A stretch of 63,533 bases of DNA, filler included, from Octopus bimaculoides (lineage: Eukaryota): NCBI RefSeq assembly GCF_001194135.2. It is 6 parts of 6 records of this genome, joined end to end, with 100 filler letters (N's around TTAATTAATTAA, not from the genome) between each part and the next. Parts side by side here need not be neighbours in the genome. Positions count along the whole stretch, not along the records: positions 40,339 to 54,225 come from NC_068991.1; 5 more parts are not named here. One strand, written 5' to 3'. Below, one piece after another: positions 40,239-54,480 of the stretch. The stretch's first letter is position 1. The number at the start of each line of letters is the position of its first letter. Under the pieces are notes generated by a model, which saw only the letters and a list, made by a program, of their open reading frames with translations, searched no databases and was not told the DNA's origin. The position numbers and the translations under genes are program-made.

Positions 40239-40559
40239 NNNNNNNNNNNNNNNNNNNNNNNNNNNNNNNNNNNNNNNNNNNNTTAATTAATTAANNNNNN
40301 NNNNNNNNNNNNNNNNNNNNNNNNNNNNNNNNNNNNNNTATATATATATATATATATACATACATACATATATACATATATTAATATGTACTCGTATATA
40401 TATATGTATACATATATATATATGTATACATACTGATGCAGTGGAAAATTCACTGGACAACGGTGTTTGGTGCCTGTGAAACATATCAAATGAAAAAAAA
40501 TTAGAACCTGCCAAAATTTCAAGCATACTTGTGTGCAAGCCAAGAAAAACCAAAGTTTT

Positions 40560-41320
40560 AGATTATTCTAAACAATACCAAAAAAGCGCTCGAGAAAACG
40601 AGCCCAAATACATACAAATAATTATCGACGAAGAAAAAAGTAAAACTCAACATGTTTAATTCTGTTAAGCAATATAGCACACTTGTAAAACATACATAAC
40701 ATTAAAGGCTCACAAGTATACTAATTACAGTCAACAGAATGTATAGATTTATTTGCATAGGAATCCGTTAATTAGGGATAATCAACGAGTACATTTTAGA
40801 TTCCATAAATATAAAGATATGACACTGAACGATCAACACCATTGATAAAATTATTTAATAATATAAAAAAATAATCCAGCGGCTGATTTACGCAGTTATG
40901 ATATTGTAGAATCGAATCCATTTATTTATTAAGGTTTTTTTCTGGAAACCTCTATAATTTCGAAAAACATAGATCAATATAAACGACAATGATGTGAGTT
41001 CGATAGAACGGGATTAGATAGAGTCAAAGTGTTACTCTTTTGGTGCACACTGTTCCACGTATCCAAAGACCAGGATATATCCCTGAGGAAATAAAGAGGG
41101 AGACACAGAGAGAGACACAGAAGAGATATTTTGATGCAGATATGCAGTTCTGGTGTGCATTCTTTGAGGCCAATGGAAGGATTTTCAAGATCGATAGTAT
41201 TGTTGGCGGTAGGTTTAGTGGAGTGGGAAGGTTTCTGCAATGGAAACAGACCTCGGGCTAAACGGCAACCTAGAAAACGTAGGGCAAATTAGTTGCACAC
41301 ATCTGTTGTGTTCGACTCCT
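40560..41320 (-). mobile_element. Highly decayed Penelope-like GIY-YIG region
   Basis: Reverse strand has a C..C motif followed by NCIS..YL.CVSLC.SLFI-like sequence. Weak match. Confidence 0.35.
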
Positions 41321-41879
41321 AGGCGCCATATATTACAGTGTTAGAAGAACATCCATTAGCCTGTCTAGACTACAGCTCTTCACCTAAATACGTGTGTACG
41401 TGTGTGTGTGTGTGTCTATGTGTATCAGAGTGTTATATATGTGTATATGTGCGTGCATGTTTTTTCTGGTTTGAGCACATATACGAATATGTGTGTGTGT
41501 ATGTGTTTGTTTATGTATGAATGAGAGTATGTGCATGCTGCATGTGTTTCTCTATGTGTAAGTGTGTATCTCTGTAACAAGGCCATTAAATCCATAGACC
41601 GGTTGTGCGTCTGTCTATATTAGTGTAGTTATGTACGTGTGTGTGTGTGTGTGTCTGTTTCTACATATGTATGTGTGCGTGTGTGTGTGTATCTGCGTTC
41701 ATGGAAAGACATGAAACGGTAGTTCAAGTGAGAAGGGCGAGTTCTTGAAATTGTAGTAGTAGTAGTAGTAGTAGTAGTTGTTGTTGTTGTAGGTGATTAA
41801 CCTTTAATGGTGATTAATCTTGAGCACACTACACATCCCCACCACCATCACAACAAATGTATATTCACCATTTTCCTAT

Positions 41880-42366
41880 TTCGTATGGGTTTTTGTTTTT
41901 CCTATCGGTTCAGCCCGTTTTTGATTCATTGTGCATAAAACCGTAACGGTTCAGGGCTTCGTTATTTTTGCGACTAACAAACAAAATCTCTGTCAAACTC
42001 ATCCATTAGCCAGTTCTGAAGCATTTGCAGATATACATCACCGGTCACATTTCCCTCAAAGAAAAACGGGCCATGAAGATGCTTCTTGGAGATGGCGCAC
42101 AAGACATTCACTTTTGGTGAGTGGCACTTATGCTCTCGTTTTAGAGAACTCTCTCACAAATGCACGCTGCACAGTCTTGTTCGACTGTGTTCGCGCATGC
42201 TCCAACACACAAAACACCTTTTCTCTTCCAGTTAATGCCATTTCTATATCTGAAAAGACAAACATATCAAACATTAAACTTAAAATTTTGACCTGTTTCT
42301 ACACATGCTGTTAAAATTTGAAGTCGTTTGATTGCGAAATGTTATCAACTTTTTTGAAACACACTG
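41880..42366 (-). mobile_element. Internally deleted Tc1/mariner-type transposon with TIR
   Basis: Ends tttgaaacacactg|TA. Reverse strand ISKKHLHGPFFFEGNVTGDVYLQMLQNWL matches the GP.FFE..VTG..YL.ML transposase motif. Confidence 0.75.
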
Positions 42367-43126
42367 TATATACATACATACATATATATATATATTATAT
42401 ATACATATATATTTATACATATATATATATATTTGTATATATGTATATACACATATATTTATTTATATTGTATATATGTATACATAAGTGTGTGTATGTG
42501 TAAATATCGTTATGATTATATATACATTTACGTACATTTAAATATATACATAAGTATATATANNNNNNNNNNNNNNNNNNNNNNNNNNNNNNNNNNNNNN
42601 NNNNNNNNNNNNNNNNNNNNNNNNNNNNNNNNNNNNNNNNNNNNNNNNNNNNNNNNNNNNNNNNNNNNNNNNNNNNNNNNNNNNNNNNNNNNNNNNNNNN
42701 NNNNNNNNNNNNNNNNNNNNNNNNNNNNNNNNNNNNNNNNNNNNNNNNNNNNNNNNNNNNNNNNNNNNNNNNNNNNNNNNNNNNNNNNNNNNNNNNNNNN
42801 NNNNNNNNNNNNNNNNNNNNNNNNNNNNNNNNNNNNNNNNNNNNNNNNNNNNNNNNNNNNNNNNNNNNNNNNNNNNNNNNNNNNNNNNNNNNNNNNNNNN
42901 NNNNNNNNNNNNNNNNNNNNNNNNNNNNNNNNNNNNNNNNNNNNNNNNNNNNNNNNNNNNNNNNNNNNNNNNNNNNNNNNNNNNNNNNNNNNNNNNNNNN
43001 NNNNNNNNNNNNNNNNNNNNNNNNNNNNNNNNNNNNNNNNNNNNNNNNNNNNNNNNNNNNNNNNNNNNNNNNNATATGTATATATATATACATTTACATA
43101 TGTATATATATATACATTTACATATG

Positions 43127-43160
<34 letters not shown>

Positions 43161-43789
43161 TATGTAAATATATATATAGAAATGCATATATACGTGTATG
43201 TTGTTTGTGTGTTTACTGTGACCTTTTCAGCTTCTGCATTTGTTATTTACTTTGAACGAGGGAGGGAGAAAATGCTTGGTGTGGCAAACAGAAGAAAGGC
43301 AGGAAGGTAGAAGTACTGCAGTAGCAGCAGCAGCAGTAGTAGTAGTAGTAGTAGTAGAAGTAGTAATCATTGAGGTCGTGATGGTGGTGGTCGTCGTCGT
43401 TGTCGTCGTTGNNNNNNNNNNNNNNNNNNNNNNNNNNNNNNNNNNNNNNNNNNNNNNNNNNNNNNNNNNNNNNNNNNNNNNNNNNNNNNNNNNNNNNNNN
43501 NNNNNNNNNNNNNNNNNNNNNNNNNNNNNNNNNNNNNNNNNNNNNNNNNNNNNNNNNNNNNNNNNNNNNNNNNNNNNNNNNNNNNNNNNNNNNNNNNNNN
43601 NNNNNNNNNNNNNNNNNNNNNNNNNNNNNNNNNNNNNNNNNNNNNNNNNNNNNNNNNNNNNNNNNNNNNNNNNNNNNNNNNNNNNNNNNNNNNNNNNNNN
43701 NNNNNNNNNNNNNNNNNNNNNNNNNNNNNNTATATATATATATATATATGCATATATATATATATGTATGTATATTCATATGTGTATTA

Positions 43790-44285
43790 ATATACACAGC
43801 GGGGCAGAGGGACCAAACTTTGGGGAATAACAGAGTTGGAGAATGGGAGAATGGGGCAGGACAAGCTCCGCCAATACATGCCACAATGGTAGAAACGGAT
43901 GTTAAGCTACTGATCCGAGAGATTGAGAGATGAGTGGAGCCTCAAGGTAAGAAGTTTCGATGAGAGATTAGCATAGCAGACATGGGCGGCAGCTTTGATG
44001 ATGTCTTGGGCAACAACAACGTTGCTTTCGCCGAATTTCTATGAAGGGAAAACCCACAGGGCAGCGACATTTTATTCATGAGCACCTGTGAGCCTGGTTC
44101 TGTAGAAGACAAACTGATGGCCCCTGAGAGAAAGAAATAGAGAGACAGACAGACAGAGAACGGGAAGAAGAGAGATTCAAAGTGTTGGAGAAAGTCTTTG
44201 TTACTGGTTGTCTGTATTACTTTGGAGTTGTTAGAAGTGAAAGCAATGAGGCGACAGTTCGTGAGATCAGGCGGGGTTGCCATTC
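43790..44285 (-). mobile_element. Possible decayed non-LTR ORF1 (gag-like zinc knuckle) fragment
   Basis: A frameshifted reading gives IRFYHCGMYWRSLSCP...PRCVY, resembling degenerate CCHC knuckles. Weak. Confidence 0.3.
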
Positions 44286-45269
44286 ATTGGAATCGGGTAC
44301 AACAATGACATGGTACTAAATTCCAAGCTATATCCACACAGTGTTTGTTGGCACTCCGTCGCTTACGACGTCGAGGGTTCCAGTTGATCCGATCAACGGA
44401 ACAGCCCGCTCGTGAAATTAACGTGCAAGTGGCTGAGCATTCCACAGACACGTAGTTCTCGGGGATATTCAGTGTGACACAGAGTGACAACGCTGACCAT
44501 TTAAATTACCGGCACAACAGAAACAGGAAGTAAGAGTGAGAGAAAGTTGTAGTGAAAGAGTACAGCAGGGTTCGCCACCATCCCCTGCCGGAGCCTCGTG
44601 GAGCTTTAGGTGTGTTCGCTCAATAAACACTCACAACGCCCGGTCTGGGAATCGAAACCGCGATCCTATGACCGCGAGTCCGCTGCCCTAACCACTGGGC
44701 CATTGCGCCTCCACATCCACATAGAATTGCAGACATTACAACACGGTTTAAATTATCATCCTAATATTTATATGTTTTGTTACCAAGCTTCATCAGGCTG
44801 GAAATAAACACCAACAACAACAAAAACGAGACTCGACACAAAGAGAACAACACAAAAAAGAAAACATTCTGTTTAATAATCTTCTGCCAAAACAACAATT
44901 ACTGTGACAGCAGCAACAACAAAAATAACAAAACAAAAAAGCAAACATTCTACTTAAATGCAAAAATAACAACAAATAATTTATGAGCAAAAACAACTGC
45001 ACGAATAACAAGAAGGGGAAAGAAAATCAATAACATTCTATTTTACTTTGCTATGCCCTATCAACACACACATACACATATATATACACACACATACACC
45101 CATACATACATATATGCATACACACATGCATACATACGTATTTATATACGTACATACGTTCGTACGTACGTACACACAAACATACACACATACGTGCGTA
45201 TGTAGATACACATACATGCATGCATACATACTGTTTCGTATTATGAGGTAGCTATACAAACGATCCCAT

Positions 45270-45640
45270 ATCATCCGCCACGCATCACGATAGCACCGCA
45301 TCGACCTGACCATCAGATACCGTTATACACCGCTAGTCCCAATGCACTTCCAATTGTCTTGATTGCGCCGTTCGTTTCCATCGGACCCATGTTGCTTAAT
45401 CAGATCGTTTTCCTATCGTCGTGGAGGCCTTCCAAATGGCTTTTTCCGATCTCTTGGATCCTACTCTGCAACTGCACGGGTTCACCTTGGTGTCTGTGAA
45501 CCTTGTGACATGTCCGAACCAGTGGAGCTTGTGCTTTCGGTTCTCTGCGATTCCATTATTCGCTCCGCTCCGTTCTCGAATTATGCCCTCGTAATTCGAT
45601 CCCATGCATGGATCTTTCCATGGATCCTTTTCGCAGTGGT
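45270..45640 (-). mobile_element. RTE-type LINE 3' fragment
   Basis: KLHWFGHVTR...RVGSKR..KAIW.. RTE C-terminal pattern, degenerate. Confidence 0.65.
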
Positions 45641-46149
45641 GGCTATGGCTGTGGTGGTTATGGTCACAAGAGTTGAAGTCTTAGTTGTATGACAATGGGT
45701 GAACCCTATTTGAATAGACCTATGATCAATGTAGCCCAACCGTGACCATCGCGATCTGTTAGGAGAATGTGTAGGACCACAATACCTTATAAGGCCTTTC
45801 ACTTAAGTGTTTGATTTAAGATATTTACTTGTTTATTTCTCCCGTTTGTCTGGCAATCACCAAAAGCTAGACAATGTTTTTATTGTGGTTTGGGGTAGAA
45901 TTGGTTGCTGCTGGTGTCGGCATTGTTATTGCTGAAGAGTTTAAGGTCGGATAGTTTATTTTCTTGTTTCCCCATTTAACAAATGTACCTACGCACATTC
46001 ACACACACACACACACACTTATATTTGTGTGCGTGCGTTTATATATAATATACATATATATGTATTACATATATATTATAAATATATATATAAACGTGTG
46101 TGTGTGGGTGGGTGTGTCTGTTTGTCTGTATATACATATGTATACAGAG

Positions 46150-46184
<35 letters not shown>

Positions 46185-46619
46185 NNNNNNNNNNNNNNNN
46201 NNNNNNNNNNNNNNNNNNNNNNNNNNNNNNNNNNNNNNNNNNNNNNNNNNNNNNNNNNNNNNNNNNNNNNNNNNNNNNNNNNNNNNNNNNNNNNNNNNNN
46301 NNNNNNNNNNNNNNNNNNNNNNNNNNNNNNNNNNNNNNNNNNNNNNNNNNNNNNNNNNNNNNNNNNNNNNNNNNNNCATACACTATATATTTTGATGTAT
46401 ACTTGTGCAAACGCAGATATATATATATATATATATGTGTGTGTGTATAAGTCTATATATAATGCCATCTATTTAGCTCACTCTATCCCTGTCCTACAAT
46501 CTTTTTCCATCCCTTCTCTCTCCAGACACACACTAACACATAGAACCACACACACACATACACAAACACAGACGCAAGCACACATACACACTTGCACACA
46601 TGCTCCCATACACACTTTC

Positions 46620-46720
46620 AGATACATACGTACACATGCGCGAGCGTGCCGAAACTTCCTCCCCGCGTCTAGGCCTCCCTGTAGGAAGGCTGGAATTAGC
46701 GCCATCTTGTAGACGTGGTC
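46620..46720. promoter_or_regulatory. CpG-containing promoter-like patch with YY1-like and ETS-like motifs
   Basis: gcgcgagcg, ACTTCC (ETS core) and GCGCCATCTTG (YY1-like) within 100 bp in a CpG-poor background. Motif evidence only. Confidence 0.3.
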
Positions 46721-46829
46721 GGTGTAAGAGTGACAAACATGAAGAGATGAGCCAAATGTCAAACGTGCCAACAGAACATTCTGCCATTTATGACGGACAC
46801 GATGCAAGTGAAACACTGGAGTAAACGCA

Positions 46830-47520
46830 TTCGGCAGCTGGTAAGCTTTCTAAGAGAGCGGTAGTGGAGATGGTTAACTAAGCTGGGGGAGCAGGCGTCA
46901 CTTCCACACACGTTTCTGGCACAGCTGTGAAGTCCAGATGTGACTGATTGAGTAGTTGTGACAACCAGAGTTGAAGTGACTGTCGCAGTTGTAACTTCCA
47001 GATGTTAGCTAACCACTGGAACAGATGTCTTCCAAGTGTTAAATGATTAGCGCAGATGTGACTTCCAGACATTAAGTGACAGGTAGAGCAGTTGTGGCTT
47101 CCAGATGTTAACTGACTGGGGAAACAGCTGTGCCCTTTGGATCTCAAAACATTTGAGAATTCCGGATGACAATTCACAAGGTGAGCATTTGGAGCGCATA
47201 GGTCTTAACTTGCTAGTGGAGCACTTGAGACTTGCAGATGTTATCTTAATAGGGAGATAGACGTGTCTTTAAATTCAAAGATGTTATCTTAATAGGGAGA
47301 TAGACGTGTCTTTAAATTCAAAGATGTTATCTTAATAGAGAGATAGACGTTAAGTTGCGAGGGAATTGAAATTTCAATATGTCACTCACTGTAAAAGAAG
47401 CTACGACGGCCCTGTTAACTAACTGGTATGACTAGTAAAGACATTGTGTCTACCAGATGTAATGGTGAAATTACGATGTTTCTTGCTGGTGGAACAGATG
47501 TGATGTCCAGTTGTTAAGTC
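46830..47520 (+). repeat. Degenerate ~33-36-bp repeat tract carrying CAGATGT, plus a 43-bp tandem repeat (47236-47351, 2.7 copies)
   Basis: Recurrent agtgac..gcagttgt.acttccagatgtta units; the 43-mer agatgttatcttaatagggagatagacgtgtctttaaattcaa is repeated. Confidence 0.75.
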
Positions 47521-47664
47521 AAGAAGGAATTACAATGGCAAGACACTGTGATACATATGACTCTTCCAATTATTAGGTTTCAAATTTTGGCACAAGGCCA
47601 GCAATATCGTGGGAGGTGTAACTTGATTACATCGACTCCAGTGCTCAACTGTTACTTATTTAAT

Positions 47665-47712
<48 letters not shown>

Positions 47713-47767
47713 GCGTGCGCGCGCATTAACTGTGGAAGTAGCGTTAATACCAAATGACCGAATGACA

Positions 47768-48253
47768 ATCTTTATATCCAACTTAACGTGGATTTATGGT
47801 CATAACGCCGTATTACTGCAATATTCGCCTTGAGAGATCCTCTCATAGTGTTAATAGTACGGATATATCGTTAGCATACAACAATCGTCTGGTATGGGTG
47901 GCAGAACTACTAGATTGCGTGATATCAGCATACATGCGCTTCATCAGTATCAGGCAACCGCTCACCACATGCTAGCTGAATTCCAGGCTAAACAATCACT
48001 TCTTTATTTCTTATACATCGTTGCCGGTGGAACTTGGCTGGCATACGGTGAACTGACGCTGCTACTGAAGAAGCGCTTGTACGCTAAAATCACCGGATCA
48101 AACAATTCTGCCTCCTATGCTAGACAATTCTCGTCTGCTAACGATATGCCTGTGATTTTAGCCCTATACATCTATATGAGAGGATCTCTCAAGTTGAATA
48201 CTACAGTATTCAGCGTTCTAACAATACACCCAGGTTAAGCTGGATATGAAAAT
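47768..48253. other. ~490-nt imperfect palindrome / long hairpin with two opposite-polarity hammerhead-like motifs
   Basis: Arm 47768-47995 aligns to the reverse complement of 48018-48253. The gapless block 47865-47953 vs 48059-48147 is ~68/89 identical by hand count, and 47829-47847 vs 48175-48193 is a perfect 19-bp block. Confidence 0.9.
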
Positions 48254-48790
48254 TCCAATATATATGAATATATATAGGTAAATACGTATATCATGGCCTT
48301 CGGAAAGGACTCATGAGTTTTAGTGGTCAGAGTATTGACTTCACGATTATAAGCTAGTATGGTCGATACCTGGTTCTACTGATGGCTGTGTGTTGTGTCC
48401 TTGACCAAGGCATTTCATTTTATATTTACACACAGTTTAATCAGCTGCTAGTAATGGCCACCCTCGTGCTGTTGCACTCTTTTCGCCATCTATTTGGCAC
48501 ATTCTCCGCTGGGTCAAGGATGTGAGAACTGAGAGTGTTTATCTGCATACGGCTACATAGATATCTAAAACCAGTATCGGCTATGCTACCAAGCCGTATT
48601 CGCTTGCGAGTGACGGCAACTATTTATGCTTTTTTTCATACGTATACATACATAAGCACAATACTCTACATATAATAAACATGTACGTGTGTGGGTATAC
48701 ATATATACATGTATAAATGAATATATATCTGTATATATGTACGTATATAGATGAATTATAAATACATATGTCCATAAACATAGGTATGTA

Positions 48791-48840
<50 letters not shown>

Positions 48841-49301
48841 NNNNNNNNNNNNNNNNNNNNNNNNNNNNNNNNNNNNNNNNNNNNNNNNNNNNNNNNNNNN
48901 NNNNNNNNNNNNNNNNNNNNNNNNNNNNNNNNNNNNNNNNNNNNNNNNNNNNNNNNNNNNNNNNNNNNNNNNNNNNNNNNNNNNNNNNNNNNNNNNNNNN
49001 NNNNNNNNNNNNNNNNNNNNNNNNNNNNNNNNNNNNNNNNNNNNNNNNNNNNNNNNNNNNNNNNNNNNNNNNNNNNNNNNNNNNNNNNNNNNNNNNNNNN
49101 NNNNNNNNNNNNNNNNNNNNNNNNNNNNNNNNNNNNNNNNNNNNNNNNNNNNNNNNNNNNNNNNNNNNNNNNNNNNNNNNNNNNNNNNNNNNNNNNNNNN
49201 NNNNNNNNNNNNNNNNNNNNATATACATATATATATATATATATAAATATATATACATATATATGCACACATAGGTTCCTTGTAAACATGGCTGTGAAGA
49301 A

Positions 49302-49337
<36 letters not shown>

Positions 49338-50014
49338 GAGAGACCTCAATTAAACATCCACACATATACACAGACGCACATAAACTCACTGAAAAAATTG
49401 TGCGTATACATATGCACACGCACACACCTATTATCTTTTCCTGGACTGAAATTTGTGTCTTAATGTCGCGTATTTTGTTTATTCATTTTTTTTGTGTTTG
49501 TTTTTTTGTGTGTTTTATTATTGCACACAATGAGCTGTCTGTTCCATTGTAGTGACTTCATCACACACCAACACACATACACACACACACACACCAGACA
49601 CTCGCATATACGCAGACACACCAGACACACACAGATACACGTTCCCTCCTTCACCACCCTCTCTTCACTTCTACCACCACCATTACCACCACCGTCAACA
49701 ACAACAACAACACTAATACGAAAGAAATAAAGCCGGAGCTTATCATGGTCGTTCGACAGGCTAGAAATAGCAACATATATATATATATTCTTATATTCTT
49801 TTATAACTCTTCGAAACGCCTGTGTTAGAATGGTGGCAGCTGATGAAGGAAAATGTTCTCTATGTGGCCTGTGTGTTTTCTGTACTCTGGTTATTATTTT
49901 TTTTTTGTCTACGTTTTTTTGCAACGTCCTGTACCCAGATATGCACCTATATATACAGGTAGATGTAGGCATGCTCATACTTGTACGTATATATGCATAT
50001 ACTCATTTATTATT

Positions 50015-50054
<40 letters not shown>

Positions 50055-51121
50055 CAGTGCTGTGCTGATGAGACTTGTTGATATAGAAACACGTTCAAAA
50101 TTGTTCTCTTCTCTCCAGAAAAAGATAGACTACTGTTTCCTTAATGGCAAGTTATTATTAAAAAACTATTGCCCCTCATCTCACTGTGAAGGTTTCAAAA
50201 CGATATGTTTGCCTTTACTTTTGATGACAATGTTCTGCCAATAGACCCCATATTGAATGTGTCTGTGTGTCCACACCAACAGGAATGTTTTCCATATTTA
50301 TCTTAAGGCAATCTCCCCTATAAACGGCACTGTTTATTGTCTTAAATATAACATGAAGCTGCATAGGATGGCCGTACGTTCATCACCGCCACATGCACCA
50401 CCCGCTGCATGTGTGTACATGTGTGTTTGTATGTATATGTCTCCCGATATATGCGCGCATGTATGTATATGGATGGCCGTGTATGCTTCTAAGTATGTAT
50501 GAGGTTGTATGTGTGTATATGGGTATAAGAATAGATGTGTGTGTTTGTATGTATGCGTGTTTGTGGTATATACGTATGAGTGTGTGTGTGTTTGTTTGTA
50601 AGTGTGTATACATGTATATCCACAAGTACGGTATGTTTACATGTATGCATATATACATGCTACAGGCTAAACTTCACGAAAGGCTTACATATTTTCACAT
50701 TTCCATTAATGGCTTATAATTAAAATTTTCTAATTACTCTAATGAGTATTAATGAATTTTTATTTATGTGTTTGTATGTATATGCGTGCTTCATGTGTAT
50801 GTATGATGGATGTATGTATGTATTTATATGTGCAATATATATATATAATATATACATATACGTATGTAATGATATGTACATATATCTTTACATATATATA
50901 TATATACCTATATATATATATATATATATATATACTTATATATATATATATATACACATACATATATATACACATACATATATATATACATATATACATA
51001 TACATATGTATATATAAATATATACATATATATATATATACCTATATATATATATATATTTTATTGATTATATATGTGTATACATGTTTATATGTAGGTA
51101 TTTATGTATATAGGCATATAT

Positions 51122-51161
<40 letters not shown>

Positions 51162-51652
51162 GTATGCTATGTACTTAAACATTTTAATCTTAATTAACAC
51201 AATACACTCTTGCTAACAAAGTGACAAGTTTCACTGAACGAAACAAAAGCATATAATACATTATGTCCATATTTATATATTAGTCTCAATTTAAGCACAA
51301 GGCCAGCAATTTCGAGGGAGGAGTTAAATCGATTGCATCGATCCCAGTGCAGAAATTGGTGAATGAGTGAGTGAGTGAGTGAGTGAGTGAGTGAGAAAGA
51401 CAACGCTGTGCTGAAGACGTTCATTGAGGTAGAAACACAGAAAACTGTGCTGGTGTCTCCAGGAGGATTATTTGATCCTTAATACTATGCTAATACATAA
51501 GATTATCTCTCATTCTCATAGTGGAGGTCTCGAGATGTTAATGGATTAACGGATTTAGCGAAGCTATTTTCCGACCTCCACACAATGGACTAATACAGAA
51601 TTATGAATAATCTTTAATGAGGAAATATTTAACGCGATACAGTCGTGTCTTG

Positions 51653-51702
<50 letters not shown>

Positions 51703-51805
51703 CTCTCAGACGCACTCGTATATACATACAAACTTGCTCACGCTTTATAAATAGTCACATACAATGAAACACATACATATATGCACGTAGCACACATACA
51801 TATGT

Positions 51806-51896
<91 letters not shown>

Positions 51897-52019
51897 GTGT
51901 CTATTACAGGCGCGCTATCACATCCAACACCTCTGGCACTCAGCTATTTACAAGACAACCAAGAAAACCAAAAGCTTTCAAACTATCTTTGGAAATTGGA
52001 AACCACTCGCTAAATTACT

Positions 52020-52470
52020 CTCAACGCCATCACCGCAACCATCACCACTATCTTCAACACCAACACCATTACCATCATCATCAACAGCATCATCATCATC
52101 ATCGTCATCACAATCAACATCATCACCACCATCATCATCATCATCATCATCACCTTATCATCGTCATCATCATCATCATCCCCATCATCGTTATCTTCCT
52201 CCTCCTCCTCCTCCTCCCCATCATCACCATCATCATCATCGTCATCACCATCATCATCATCGTCATCACCATCATCATCATCGTCATCACCATCATCATC
52301 ATCGTCATCACCATCATCACCATCATCATCATCGTCATCACCATCATCATCATCGTCATCACCATCATCATCATCATCGTCATCGTCATCGTCATCGTTA
52401 TCATCATCGTCGTCGTCGTCGTCATCGTCATCGCCTCCGTCGCCGTGGTCGTCGTCACCCCCGGCATCAC
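52020..52470. repeat. Compound (CAT/CGT/CAC)n triplet array with an 18-nt higher-order unit
   Basis: CATCATCATCGTCATCAC is repeated about six times within a longer CAT-rich tract. Confidence 0.9.
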
Positions 52471-53003
52471 TGCCTTCGACACTGTCTTCTCCCCCCATAT
52501 TACCACCGCCACCACCACAACAACAACCAACAACCACCGCAGCTACTACCACTACTAACCTATCACAACCTCCACCCAGACACACATACACACAGAACTA
52601 CTACCATCGCTACAACTACCACCGCTACTACCACACCACCACTATTCTACCACCAATACTAAGACTACAAAACTTGCCGACGGCTTGTAACTCAGCACCC
52701 AGCTTAGGTCACGTGTCTACATACTAATTCCGCCATGTTGGAAAATATACCCCGGTGGATAAAAACGCTAGACGCTAGGGTGGCAGCAGTATTGTAGTAG
52801 TAGTAGTAGTAGTAGTAGTAGTGATGCATTAGCAGCTGCAGTAGTGTTATTAGTAGTATTACAATCACCACTTTTTCCTCTTCTTCTTTCCCTCCTTCTT
52901 TTCCTTCTTTTTCTTCCCTTTTCCTTCTTCGTCTTCTTCTTTTCCTTTTTCTTCTTTTTCTTTTCCTTCTTCTTCTTTATCTCCTACACTCTATCTCTTC
53001 TTT

Positions 53004-53067
<64 letters not shown>

Positions 53068-53879
53068 GGTACTGGTCCTAACGCATTACCATTACCAACA
53101 CCACCACACCACCTTTTCAAGAAGGTGAGAAGGACTTACCTTTCTTTTTAGCACCTGTAATATTTACATTTACGTATGTACAGGAATAACGAAGGTGCGT
53201 CGCTCAGTGGTTAAGATATTCGGCTCACGATCGTAAGGTCATGAGTTCGAATCCCGGTGGTGCGTTGTGCCCTTGTGCATGACATTTTATTTCACGTTGC
53301 TCCAGTCCTCTTGGCTGGCAAAAATGAGTTCTACCAGAATTTCAAGGGGTCAGCCTTGTCACACTCTGTGTCACGCTGAATCTCTTTGAGAACTACGTTA
53401 AGGGTACGCGTGTCTGTGGAGTGCTCAGCCACTTGCACGTTAATTTCTCAAGTACCTTACTCTGTTGATTGGATCAAGTGCACCACTCGTCGTCGTGACA
53501 GACGGAATGCCAGTTAGTTACAGCCAGTTTTGAATACATGAAACAGTGAATGTGGTTGCTACATGTCATCATTCTATAAAATATTTTAGTTATTTATGTG
53601 AAAATCATTCGTGATTATTGAAGAGACACTAAGTAGAGATAATGAGAACAACAAATTCATCGACAGAATTTTGAGGAGCACTTAAAGTTGTTCTGACTGC
53701 GAGTTCAAAAACCCAGTTTTTAAATAACATTCAGTCAAATTTCTAGAACTTGCACCGTCACCAAATATTTGTGTCTAGGATCCATTTCTAGCGTATAGCC
53801 AGCAATATAAGATTTGTTGATTGTGTGAAACTCTAATTACTCTTTTACTCTTTTACTTGTTTCAGTATAGATACATATA

Positions 53880-54045
53880 TACGACGGGATTCTTTCAGTT
53901 TCCGTCTACCAAATCCACTCACAAGGCTTTGGTCGGCCTGAGGCTATAGTAGAAGACACTTGCCCAAGGTGCCACGCAGGTGGGACTGAACCCGGAACCA
54001 TGTTGTTGGTAAGCAAGCTACTTACTACACAGCCACTCTTACGCC
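53880..54045 (-). mobile_element. tRNA-derived SINE, family B
   Basis: Near-consensus copy: acgacgggattctttcagtttccgtctacc...cttactacacagccactc. Confidence 0.85.
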
Positions 54046-54480
54046 TAATTCTTCACAAAGAGATGATAACCATAGCAACAGACTTTCCATTTCGTAAGAA
54101 TAAAAGCTATTTTGTGTCCGGCTGAATCTTTTCTCTGAATTTATTTTGATTATTATTGTTATATTTTTATTAACCGAGTGTGACCAGTAAAGGATTATTA
54201 AACTAGATCCGTCACTGAATACTTTNNNNNNNNNNNNNNNNNNNNNNNNNNNNNNNNNNNNNNNNNNNNTTAATTAATTAANNNNNNNNNNNNNNNNNNN
54301 NNNNNNNNNNNNNNNNNNNNNNNNNAACAAAACGGCAAAAGAGAGTCACTTACTGTTATAGTTTCTTCAATGAGAATATTGACCAAGGTTACCGTGGTCT
54401 TTTCCGTGGGCTTTTCCTTCCACGGCTAAACCTAAACTGTCCTCCCCTCTTTTTACACGAGAACATTACTGTGTGATACA

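What the first reader, a model, noticed from the sequence alone, without database searches (positions are those of the whole stretch)
47768..48253. ~490-nt imperfect rod-like palindrome, not explained by any recognised element
Arms of ~225 nt pair almost end to end at ~75% identity with very few indels, one asymmetric internal loop (~47848-47864 vs 48148-48174) and a ~20-nt pyrimidine-rich apical loop (~47997-48017). Mismatches are spread evenly over codon positions, so this is not a duplicated coding exon. GC and CpG content are above background. Isolated 1x1 mismatches along a long stem resemble hairpin-RNA (endo-siRNA) precursors, ADAR substrates and rod-shaped viroid-like RNAs. An old inverted duplication or fold-back element is the null model.
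Basis: partly seen in the sequence, partly recalled or inferred. Interest (0 to 1): 0.8.

Follow-up and report, generated by a model that had tools for sequence, protein, structure and literature searches.

The report
Old decayed inverted repeat in junk DNA
The 490-base hairpin-forming palindrome is real, but every test matches an old inverted duplication or transposon relic decaying neutrally in repeat-rich non-coding animal DNA, so it is most likely ordinary.

Summary
Arms 47767-47996 and 48018-48254 are reverse complements at 75.6% identity (170 matches, 55 mismatches, 4-5 indel events). They sit around a 21-nt pyrimidine-rich spacer. Both strands fold into a rod far better than shuffles (z -14 and -17).

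Nothing suggests the structure is maintained:
- Simulated neutral decay of a perfect palindrome, with the same 34 transitions and 21 transversions, gives hairpins as stable or more stable (-238 ± 13 vs -205/-231 kcal/mol).
- G·U wobble shows no strand bias (13 vs 21, p=0.23).
- Mismatch spacing is random and identity is uniform along the arms.
- Only 3 of 16 CpG columns survive in both arms, and 9 show CG<->TG/CA decay.

No Rfam family or ribozyme, tRNA, Pfam domain or protein homologue matches, in any frame. No second copy and no convincing target-site duplication was found.

The surrounding DNA is microsatellites, assembly gaps and SINE-like fragments. Their copies are about 74% alike, the same as the arms. 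From memory, these repeats are from an octopus.

Best reading: a neutral fold-back relic, either a long-TIR non-autonomous transposon or a one-off inverted duplication. If transcribed it would be a passive ADAR substrate. Genomic copy number and expression could not be tested. Interest is low.

The parts
47767..47996 (.). Left arm of the inverted repeat (230 nt)
   Evidence: Global alignment to the reverse complement of 48018-48254 gives 170/225 identical columns. nhmmer with the arm profile scores E 2e-75. BLASTN self-RC match.
47997..48017 (.). Unpaired spacer (apical loop), 21 nt, 16/21 pyrimidine on the + strand. MFE loops are 20 nt (- strand) to 34 nt (+ strand).
   Evidence: Sequence read directly. 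MFE structures.
48018..48254 (.). Right arm of the inverted repeat (237 nt)
   Evidence: nhmmer E 2e-79 on the - strand.
48168..48177 (.). 10-nt insertion in the right arm relative to the left. It sits in a locally ATAG-repetitive context and causes the asymmetric internal loop. The exact placement is ambiguous by a few nt.
   Evidence: Gap in the arm alignment. Bulge in the MFE structures.

Best explanation
This is a neutrally decaying fold-back relic. A DNA segment of about 230 bp became present in two inverted copies separated by about 20 bp, and the copies have since drifted apart to about 24% difference (K2P/JC about 0.30, or about 0.15 per arm).

The origin is unresolved between two routes:
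(a) A non-autonomous DNA transposon made almost entirely of long terminal inverted repeats (MITE or Foldback-like), or two inverted members of an old repeat family. I put this at about 0.5.
(b) A one-off local inverted duplication by replication template switching or fold-back priming. I put this at about 0.3.

It encodes nothing and there is no sign that its structure is under selection. Only if it is transcribed as part of a longer RNA (intron, UTR or lncRNA) would it fold into an imperfect dsRNA of about 225 bp. That dsRNA would be passively hyper-edited by ADAR, like the many other repeat-derived dsRNAs in animal transcriptomes.

Shown here: the structure, the neutral-looking substitution pattern, and the absence of any coding or RNA-family signal. 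Inferred: the mode of origin, the age, and behaviour as an ADAR substrate.
For: - Stability: in a neutral-decay simulation (perfect palindrome plus 34 transitions and 21 transversions at random) the MFE is -238 ± 13 kcal/mol. The observed + strand (-205) is less stable than 99.7% of simulations. The observed - strand (-231) is at the 66th percentile. There is no excess stability.
- Wobble: transition mismatches give G·U on the + strand 13 times and on the - strand 21 times, p=0.23. No transcribed-strand signature.
- Ti/Tv is 1.6.
- Mismatch pattern: isolated mismatches 38 against 31.7 ± 4.4 expected (P=0.096); longest perfect run 20 (P=0.15); identity uniform at 0.73-0.80 along the arms. Of 16 CpG columns, 3 are kept in both arms and 9 are CG<->TG/CA, which is typical deamination decay.
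- Other dispersed repeats in the same piece show the same pairwise identity as the arms (about 74%): 44349-44507 against 53338-53512, and 47571-47693 against 51278-51393.
- Context is microsatellites, N gaps and SINE-like fragments, with no coding signal.
- No Rfam hit, even with permissive filters, and no tRNA.
- No protein homologue in any frame.
Against: - Copy number in the source genome could not be measured, so the choice between transposon and local duplication is open.
- No convincing target-site duplication and no second copy in 13.9 kb. This weakens the MITE sub-case.
- A 126-codon stop-free frame (47858-48235, +) is longer than in 99.35% of dinucleotide shuffles and is unexplained except as chance.
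- Isolated mismatches are slightly, though not significantly, over-represented.
- Absence of evidence for selection in a single sequence cannot exclude a young lineage-specific function.
Confidence: 0.78

Rival explanations
1. Two independent insertions of a SINE-sized (about 230 nt) dispersed repeat landed head-to-head about 20 nt apart, like an inverted Alu pair. The arm divergence then reflects each copy's distance from its family consensus, not time since a duplication.
For: - The arm length is SINE-like.
- The pairwise identity of the arms (75.6%) equals that of bona fide dispersed SINE-like copies in the same piece (about 74%).
- There is a 10-nt direct repeat, TCTTTATATC (47769-47778) and TCTTTATTTC (48001-48010), at the left tip and in the loop.
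Against: - Both ends of both arms coincide to within a few nt, and the complementarity includes the outermost 16 nt. That would require two full-length copies with no tails.
- No A-rich or microsatellite tail, no tRNA/5S/7SL-like head, and no third copy in the piece.
- The 10-nt repeat is T-rich and of borderline significance.
Confidence: 0.1
2. It is a functional long-hairpin RNA gene (hpRNA). The transcript folds, Dicer cuts it into endo-siRNAs, and these silence a target gene or selfish element in trans.
For: - It has the long, nearly end-to-end hairpin geometry of Drosophila hpRNAs.
- The - strand folds 26-28 kcal/mol better than the + strand.
Against: - Known hpRNAs arise from, and retain homology to, their target genes (PMC10317233). 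The arms match no protein in any frame among billions.
- 24% arm divergence would give heavily mismatched duplexes.
- The strand difference is within the neutral expectation (14% of simulations have as large a difference). The wobble bias is p=0.23.
- If the host is a mollusc (from memory), a 32-species survey including O. bimaculoides found no endo-siRNAs (PMC12479628).
Confidence: 0.04
3. It is a selected cis-regulatory dsRNA. In this reading the hairpin is kept in an intron or UTR to recruit ADAR, or other dsRNA-binding proteins, and so control editing, splicing or nuclear retention of a host transcript.
For: - It meets the operational criterion for a putative ADAR-bound dsRNA: at least 65% identity over a long stretch within ±2 kb (PMC5625713).
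- The likely host lineage has very high editing activity (same paper).
Against: - No exon or gene was recognised in the 13.9-kb piece.
- No excess stability, no strand bias, and CpG decay as in neutral DNA.
- Such repeat-derived dsRNAs are extremely numerous and mostly incidental.
Confidence: 0.05
4. It is an integrated copy or template of a viroid-like or retrozyme-type rod-shaped circular RNA.
For: Only the rod-like fold with about 75-85% pairing.
Against: - No hammerhead, HDV-like, twister, hairpin or other ribozyme, and no other Rfam match, even at E<=10 with lax filters.
- Not tandemly repeated, and no LTR-like or direct-repeat flanks.
- There is a single closed end. The other end is simply where complementarity stops.
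- The substitution pattern is that of decaying DNA.
Confidence: 0.01
5. The 126-codon open frame crossing the loop (47858-48235, +) is a real small protein gene or exon.
For: The stop-free length is exceeded in only 0.65% of dinucleotide shuffles.
Against: - No homologue in the word-indexed 5.8-billion set.
- No homologue by full HMMER against 1.84 billion representatives. The only hit is a spurious tandem-repeat translation.
- No Pfam domain.
- The exact ORF is not called anywhere in public assemblies.
- Arm differences show no codon periodicity.
Confidence: 0.01

Closest known systems
Long-TIR non-autonomous DNA transposons (palindromic MITEs, Foldback-like elements)
   Same: - Under 800 bp and non-coding.
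- Almost the whole element consists of two inverted arms around a short spacer.
- It sits among other transposon debris.
   Different: - No target-site duplication above chance.
- No second copy seen.
- No subterminal tandem repeats as in Foldback, and no inner/outer direct repeats as in IR/DR Tc1 elements.
- The termini (AATCTTTATATCC...) match no superfamily motif I know (from memory).
Inverted SINE pairs (for example inverted Alu pairs), the main ADAR hyper-editing substrates
   Same: Two segments of about 230 nt in opposite orientation within a few tens of nt, about 75% complementary. If transcribed, they would form the kind of dsRNA described in PMC5625713.
   Different: - The arms have no SINE hallmarks (Pol III head, tail, own TSDs).
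- The arms end at exactly matching positions.
- Expression is unknown.
Drosophila hpRNA loci (endo-siRNA precursors)
   Same: A single long imperfect hairpin of several hundred nt formed by an inverted duplication.
   Different: - No detectable parent or target gene.
- The arms are much more diverged than in productive hpRNAs.
- The probable host phylum lacks detectable endo-siRNAs (PMC12479628).
- No small-RNA data.
Viroid-like rods and retrozyme circular RNAs
   Same: Rod-like secondary structure.
   Different: No ribozyme, no tandem or LTR context, DNA-type decay pattern, and only one closed end.

Membership tests
MITE / fold-back non-autonomous DNA transposon | Terminal inverted repeats | tested here: met
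   Arms 47767-47996 and 48018-48254 are 75.6% complementary right out to the tips.
MITE / fold-back non-autonomous DNA transposon | Small size and no coding capacity | tested here: met
   488 bp. No Pfam domain or protein homologue in any frame.
MITE / fold-back non-autonomous DNA transposon | Target-site duplication flanking the element | tested here: not met
   A scan of 16x16 boundary pairs with k=2-10 found only CAAT (4 nt) and TGACAAT/TGAAAAT at asymmetric boundaries. Both are at chance level. At this age, erosion of a short TSD is possible.
MITE / fold-back non-autonomous DNA transposon | Multiple dispersed copies in the genome | not testable with these tools
   No other copy in the 13.9-kb piece. 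The source genome is not in any searchable collection. 16/19-mer scans of viral, metagenome and prokaryotic contigs gave only chance hits.
hpRNA / endo-siRNA locus | Long inverted repeat folding into a single hairpin | tested here: met
   MFE -205 and -233 kcal/mol, z -14 and -17.
hpRNA / endo-siRNA locus | Arm homology to a target gene | tested here: not met
   No protein homologue for any reading frame of the arms. Non-coding or species-specific targets cannot be excluded.
hpRNA / endo-siRNA locus | Dicer-dependent 21-23-nt small RNAs from the arms | not testable with these tools
   No expression data are available. Literature reports no endo-siRNAs in molluscs (PMC12479628).
Viroid-like / retrozyme circular RNA | Self-cleaving ribozyme (hammerhead, HDV-like, hairpin, twister) | tested here: not met
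   An Rfam 15 scan at E<=10 of 47740-48280 returned only two chance-level hits, MIR477 and SNORD74. Nothing.
Viroid-like / retrozyme circular RNA | Circularity, or tandem/LTR-flanked genomic template | tested here: not met
   No tandem copies or direct-repeat flanks. Circular RNA itself is not testable.
Structured RNA under selection (any) | Stability or wobble pattern beyond neutral decay; covariation in orthologues | tested here: not met
   The observed MFE is not better than 150 neutral-decay simulations. G·U strand bias is p=0.23. Covariation is not testable because no orthologue is available.
SINE (as the identity of each arm) | Pol III-type head (tRNA/5S/7SL) and 3' tail | tested here: not met
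   No ARAGORN or Rfam match in the arms. No similarity to the two SINE-like families present in the piece.

The most novel reading that the evidence does not exclude
The hairpin is a young, lineage-specific long-dsRNA gene in a lophotrochozoan, probably a cephalopod. It could be an hpRNA-type small-RNA precursor, in a phylum reported to lack endo-siRNAs. Or it could be a dedicated ADAR-recruiting or ADAR-titrating dsRNA. Its - strand is the functional one. The - strand folds about 26-28 kcal/mol better than the + strand and has 21 G·U against 13.
Probability: 0.05. Interest if true: 0.55.

Novelty: new member of a known kind. Interest (0 to 1): 0.12.

Why it matters
As it stands it matters little. 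Imperfect inverted repeats of a few hundred bp are a routine by-product of transposon activity and replication errors in repeat-rich animal genomes.

Collectively, such repeats are the main source of endogenous dsRNA edited by ADAR (PMC5625713). If the locus is from an octopus, it is one more example of the abundant dsRNA-forming loci thought to underlie the very high hyper-editing in that lineage.

It would become interesting only if three things held: it is single-copy, conserved with compensatory changes, and expressed as a discrete RNA.

Tried and rejected
- Rfam 15 over the whole piece and, with laxer filters, over the palindrome alone. Only microsatellite-driven sub-threshold miRNA hits elsewhere; nothing in the palindrome.
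- ARAGORN: no tRNA.
- Protein homology of the 126-aa open frame: the word-indexed search found nothing. Full HMMER against 1.84 billion representatives gave one spurious tandem-repeat hit. Pfam found nothing.
- A chimeric query of all other open stretches of the arms: nothing.
- Exact-ORF look-ups, to fetch the same or orthologous locus from public assemblies: five ORFs, none on record.
- DNA scans with the 16/19-mer shared by both arms, in viral, metagenome and prokaryotic genome contigs: only chance hits that do not extend.
- A LINE-tail-like ORF (45399-45680, -) used to identify the organism: no candidates, so that annotation remains a memory-based guess.
- A full-text search for SINE sequence strings: none.
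- IR/DR Tc1-like architecture (inner and outer direct repeats within the arms): none.
- piggyBac/Kolobok TTAA boundaries: rejected, because complementarity continues 16 nt outside the symmetric TTAA sites.
- Derivation of the arms from the 3' part of a remembered SINE consensus: not significant, E 2.2.
- Assembly artefact: rejected, because the arms differ by 24%.

Full report
**1. The observation**

The piece 40339-54225 is eukaryotic-looking. It has four N gaps (42563-43073, 43412-43730, 46185-46376, 48841-49220), 49 tandem-repeat rows that are mostly microsatellites, about 38% GC, and no recognisable coding sequence.

Within it, 47767-48254 matches its own reverse complement with E about 1e-48. 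A global alignment of 47767-47996 with the reverse complement of 48018-48254 gives 170 identities, 55 mismatches and 17 gap columns. That is 75.6% identity, with one 10-nt indel plus three or four 1-2-nt ones.

The spacer 47997-48017 is 16/21 pyrimidine.

As RNA, the + strand folds at -205.1 kcal/mol (z -14.4) and the - strand at -233.3 kcal/mol (z -16.6). In each case 0 of 100 shuffles fold as well.

The one exception is 'GC and CpG above background', which is marginal: GC is 41.6% against 38.2%, CpG o/e is 0.95 against 0.79, and neither is an outlier among 103 windows.

**2. Is the structure maintained?**

I tested whether the hairpin looks any better than a perfect palindrome left to decay.

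- *Stability.* Keeping the observed gaps, I rebuilt 150 perfect ancestors and scattered 34 transitions and 21 transversions at random. These fold at -238 ± 13 kcal/mol. The real + strand (-205) is worse than 99.7% of them. The real - strand (-231) is average. The difference between strands is matched or exceeded in 14% of simulations.
- *Wobble.* Transition mismatches give G·U on the + strand 13 times and on the - strand 21 times (p=0.23).
- *Spacing.* Isolated 1x1 mismatches number 38, against 31.7 ± 4.4 expected (P=0.096). The longest perfect run is 20 (P=0.15). Identity is flat at 0.73-0.80 along the arms.
- *CpG decay.* Of 16 aligned dinucleotide columns with CpG in at least one arm, only 3 are CpG in both and 9 are CG<->TG/CA. 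This is the signature of deamination in unconstrained DNA.
- *Other rates.* Ti/Tv is 1.6. The ratio of indel events to substitutions (about 4-5 to 55) is ordinary.

Nothing here indicates selection on pairing.

**3. Is it a known element?**

- *RNA families.* Rfam 15 finds nothing in the palindrome at E<=1 over the piece, or at E<=10 over the palindrome alone. In particular there is no ribozyme and no miRNA, snoRNA or SINE-type RNA. There is no tRNA.
- *The open frame.* The longest open frame (126 codons, 47858-48235, +) crosses the loop. It is longer than in 99.35% of dinucleotide shuffles. It has no homologue in the word-indexed set. Full HMMER against 1.84 billion representatives gives only a spurious hit to a translated tandem repeat. 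Pfam finds nothing.
- *Other frames.* All other open stretches of both arms, searched as one chimeric query, also find nothing. The arms are therefore not a recognisable gene or transposase fragment.
- *Architecture.* There are no internal direct repeats of the IR/DR kind and no Foldback-type subrepeats.
- *Boundaries.* Symmetric TTAA sites lie inside the arms, but complementarity continues 16 nt beyond them, so they are not piggyBac-type boundaries. A systematic TSD scan finds only chance-level candidates.
- *Copy number.* No other copy, even diverged, exists in the 13.9-kb piece (blastn, nhmmer).

**4. Relatives elsewhere**

The tools hold no eukaryotic genome DNA that I could reach. Exact-ORF look-ups for five ORFs of the piece failed. 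Scans for the 16/19-mer shared by both arms gave only hits that do not extend beyond the seed. Genomic copy number, orthologues and covariation are therefore untested.

**5. Context and probable organism**

Two dispersed repeat families occur in the piece.

- *First family.* One family is a repeat of about 320 nt with a tRNA-like B-box. I wrote its consensus out from memory before reading those coordinates. It matches 44351-44659 (-) at 90% over 322 nt (E 5e-128) and 53343-53510 (+) at 84.5%. The two copies are about 74% alike.
- *Second family.* A second 'head' occurs at 47576-47665 and 51288-51350. Each copy runs into a microsatellite.

From memory, both families are abundant octopus repeats, so the piece is probably octopod. 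This is a recollection and not a tool result.

Two consequences follow if it is right:
- Molluscs, including O. bimaculoides, show no endo-siRNA pathway (PMC12479628). That counts against the hpRNA reading.
- Octopus has an exceptionally high density of loci able to form long dsRNA, and massive ADAR hyper-editing concentrated in repeats (PMC5625713). A transcribed copy of this hairpin would then be one ordinary substrate among very many.

With the published octopus calibration (JC 0.09 is about 25 My and JC 0.2 is about 56 My; PMC13282606), about 0.15 substitutions per arm would put the event at roughly 40 My. This assumes the arms started identical.

The arm-to-arm identity equals the copy-to-copy identity of the neighbouring SINE-like repeats. 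That fits an origin during the same old wave of repeat activity.

**6. Conclusion**

The most likely explanation (about 0.8) is a neutral relic of an inverted duplication. Its origin is either a long-TIR non-autonomous transposon or inverted repeat pair, or a one-off template-switch duplication.

The functional readings are not excluded, but they have no positive support:
- hpRNA, about 0.04.
- Selected ADAR-recruiting or regulatory dsRNA, about 0.05.
- Viroid-like RNA, about 0.01.
- Coding sequence, about 0.01.

The decisive tests are genome-wide copy number, orthologue comparison, and RNA and small-RNA mapping. All need data that are not available here.

Noticed in passing
window 44351-44659 (-) and 53343-53510 (+): Two copies of a tRNA-derived SINE-like repeat. 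They are 90% and 84.5% identical to a consensus I recalled from memory as an abundant octopus repeat, and about 74% identical to each other. They form a distant inverted pair about 9 kb apart. This suggests the piece is from an octopod genome. That is memory-based and not verifiable here.
   Followed up: partly
window 47576-47665 and 51288-51350: A second dispersed repeat 'head' (about 60-90 nt). In both copies it runs straight into a microsatellite: (GT)25 at 47667-47717 and (GTGA)9 at 51359-51395. It may be a microsatellite-seeding or microsatellite-tailed SINE.
   Followed up: partly
window 46916-47527: A degenerate array of 36/67-nt units related to GCAGATGTGACTTCCAGATGTTA. It includes a near-perfect 43-nt tandem repeat, x2.7 at 98%, at 47236-47350. 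This is an unclassified minisatellite or transposon-internal repeat just upstream of the palindrome.
   Followed up: no
window 47858-48235 (+): A 126-codon stop-free frame runs through the right-hand part of the left arm, the loop and most of the right arm. It is exceeded in only 0.65% of dinucleotide shuffles, yet has no homologue anywhere. It is probably chance.
   Followed up: yes
window 47769-47778 and 48001-48010: A 10-nt direct repeat, TCTTTATATC and TCTTTATTTC, between the left tip of the palindrome and its apical loop. It could be a TSD of a roughly 220-nt element that was later inverted-duplicated together with its flank. It is T-rich and of borderline significance.
   Followed up: partly
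window 48785-49273: The '244-nt, 97% complementary' inverted repeats I1-I6 reported by the repeat finder are an artefact. They come from (AT)n microsatellites flanking a 380-N assembly gap (48841-49220).
   Followed up: yes
window 52073-52432 and 51809-51892, 53004-53063: Very long microsatellites: (CAT)120, (TG)42 and (TAC)20. They produce long spurious His/Asp/Ser-rich open frames of up to 303 codons.
   Followed up: no
window 45399-45680 (-): A 94-codon open stretch containing ...KLHWFGHVTR..., which resembles the C-terminal tail of non-LTR retrotransposon ORF2 proteins (from memory). No database support: Pfam and the homologue search were empty.
   Followed up: partly
whole piece 40339-54225: About 80 sub-threshold Rfam hits to mir-297, mir-466, mir-3149 and similar families all lie on CA/TA/GT microsatellites. 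They are low-complexity artefacts.
   Followed up: yes
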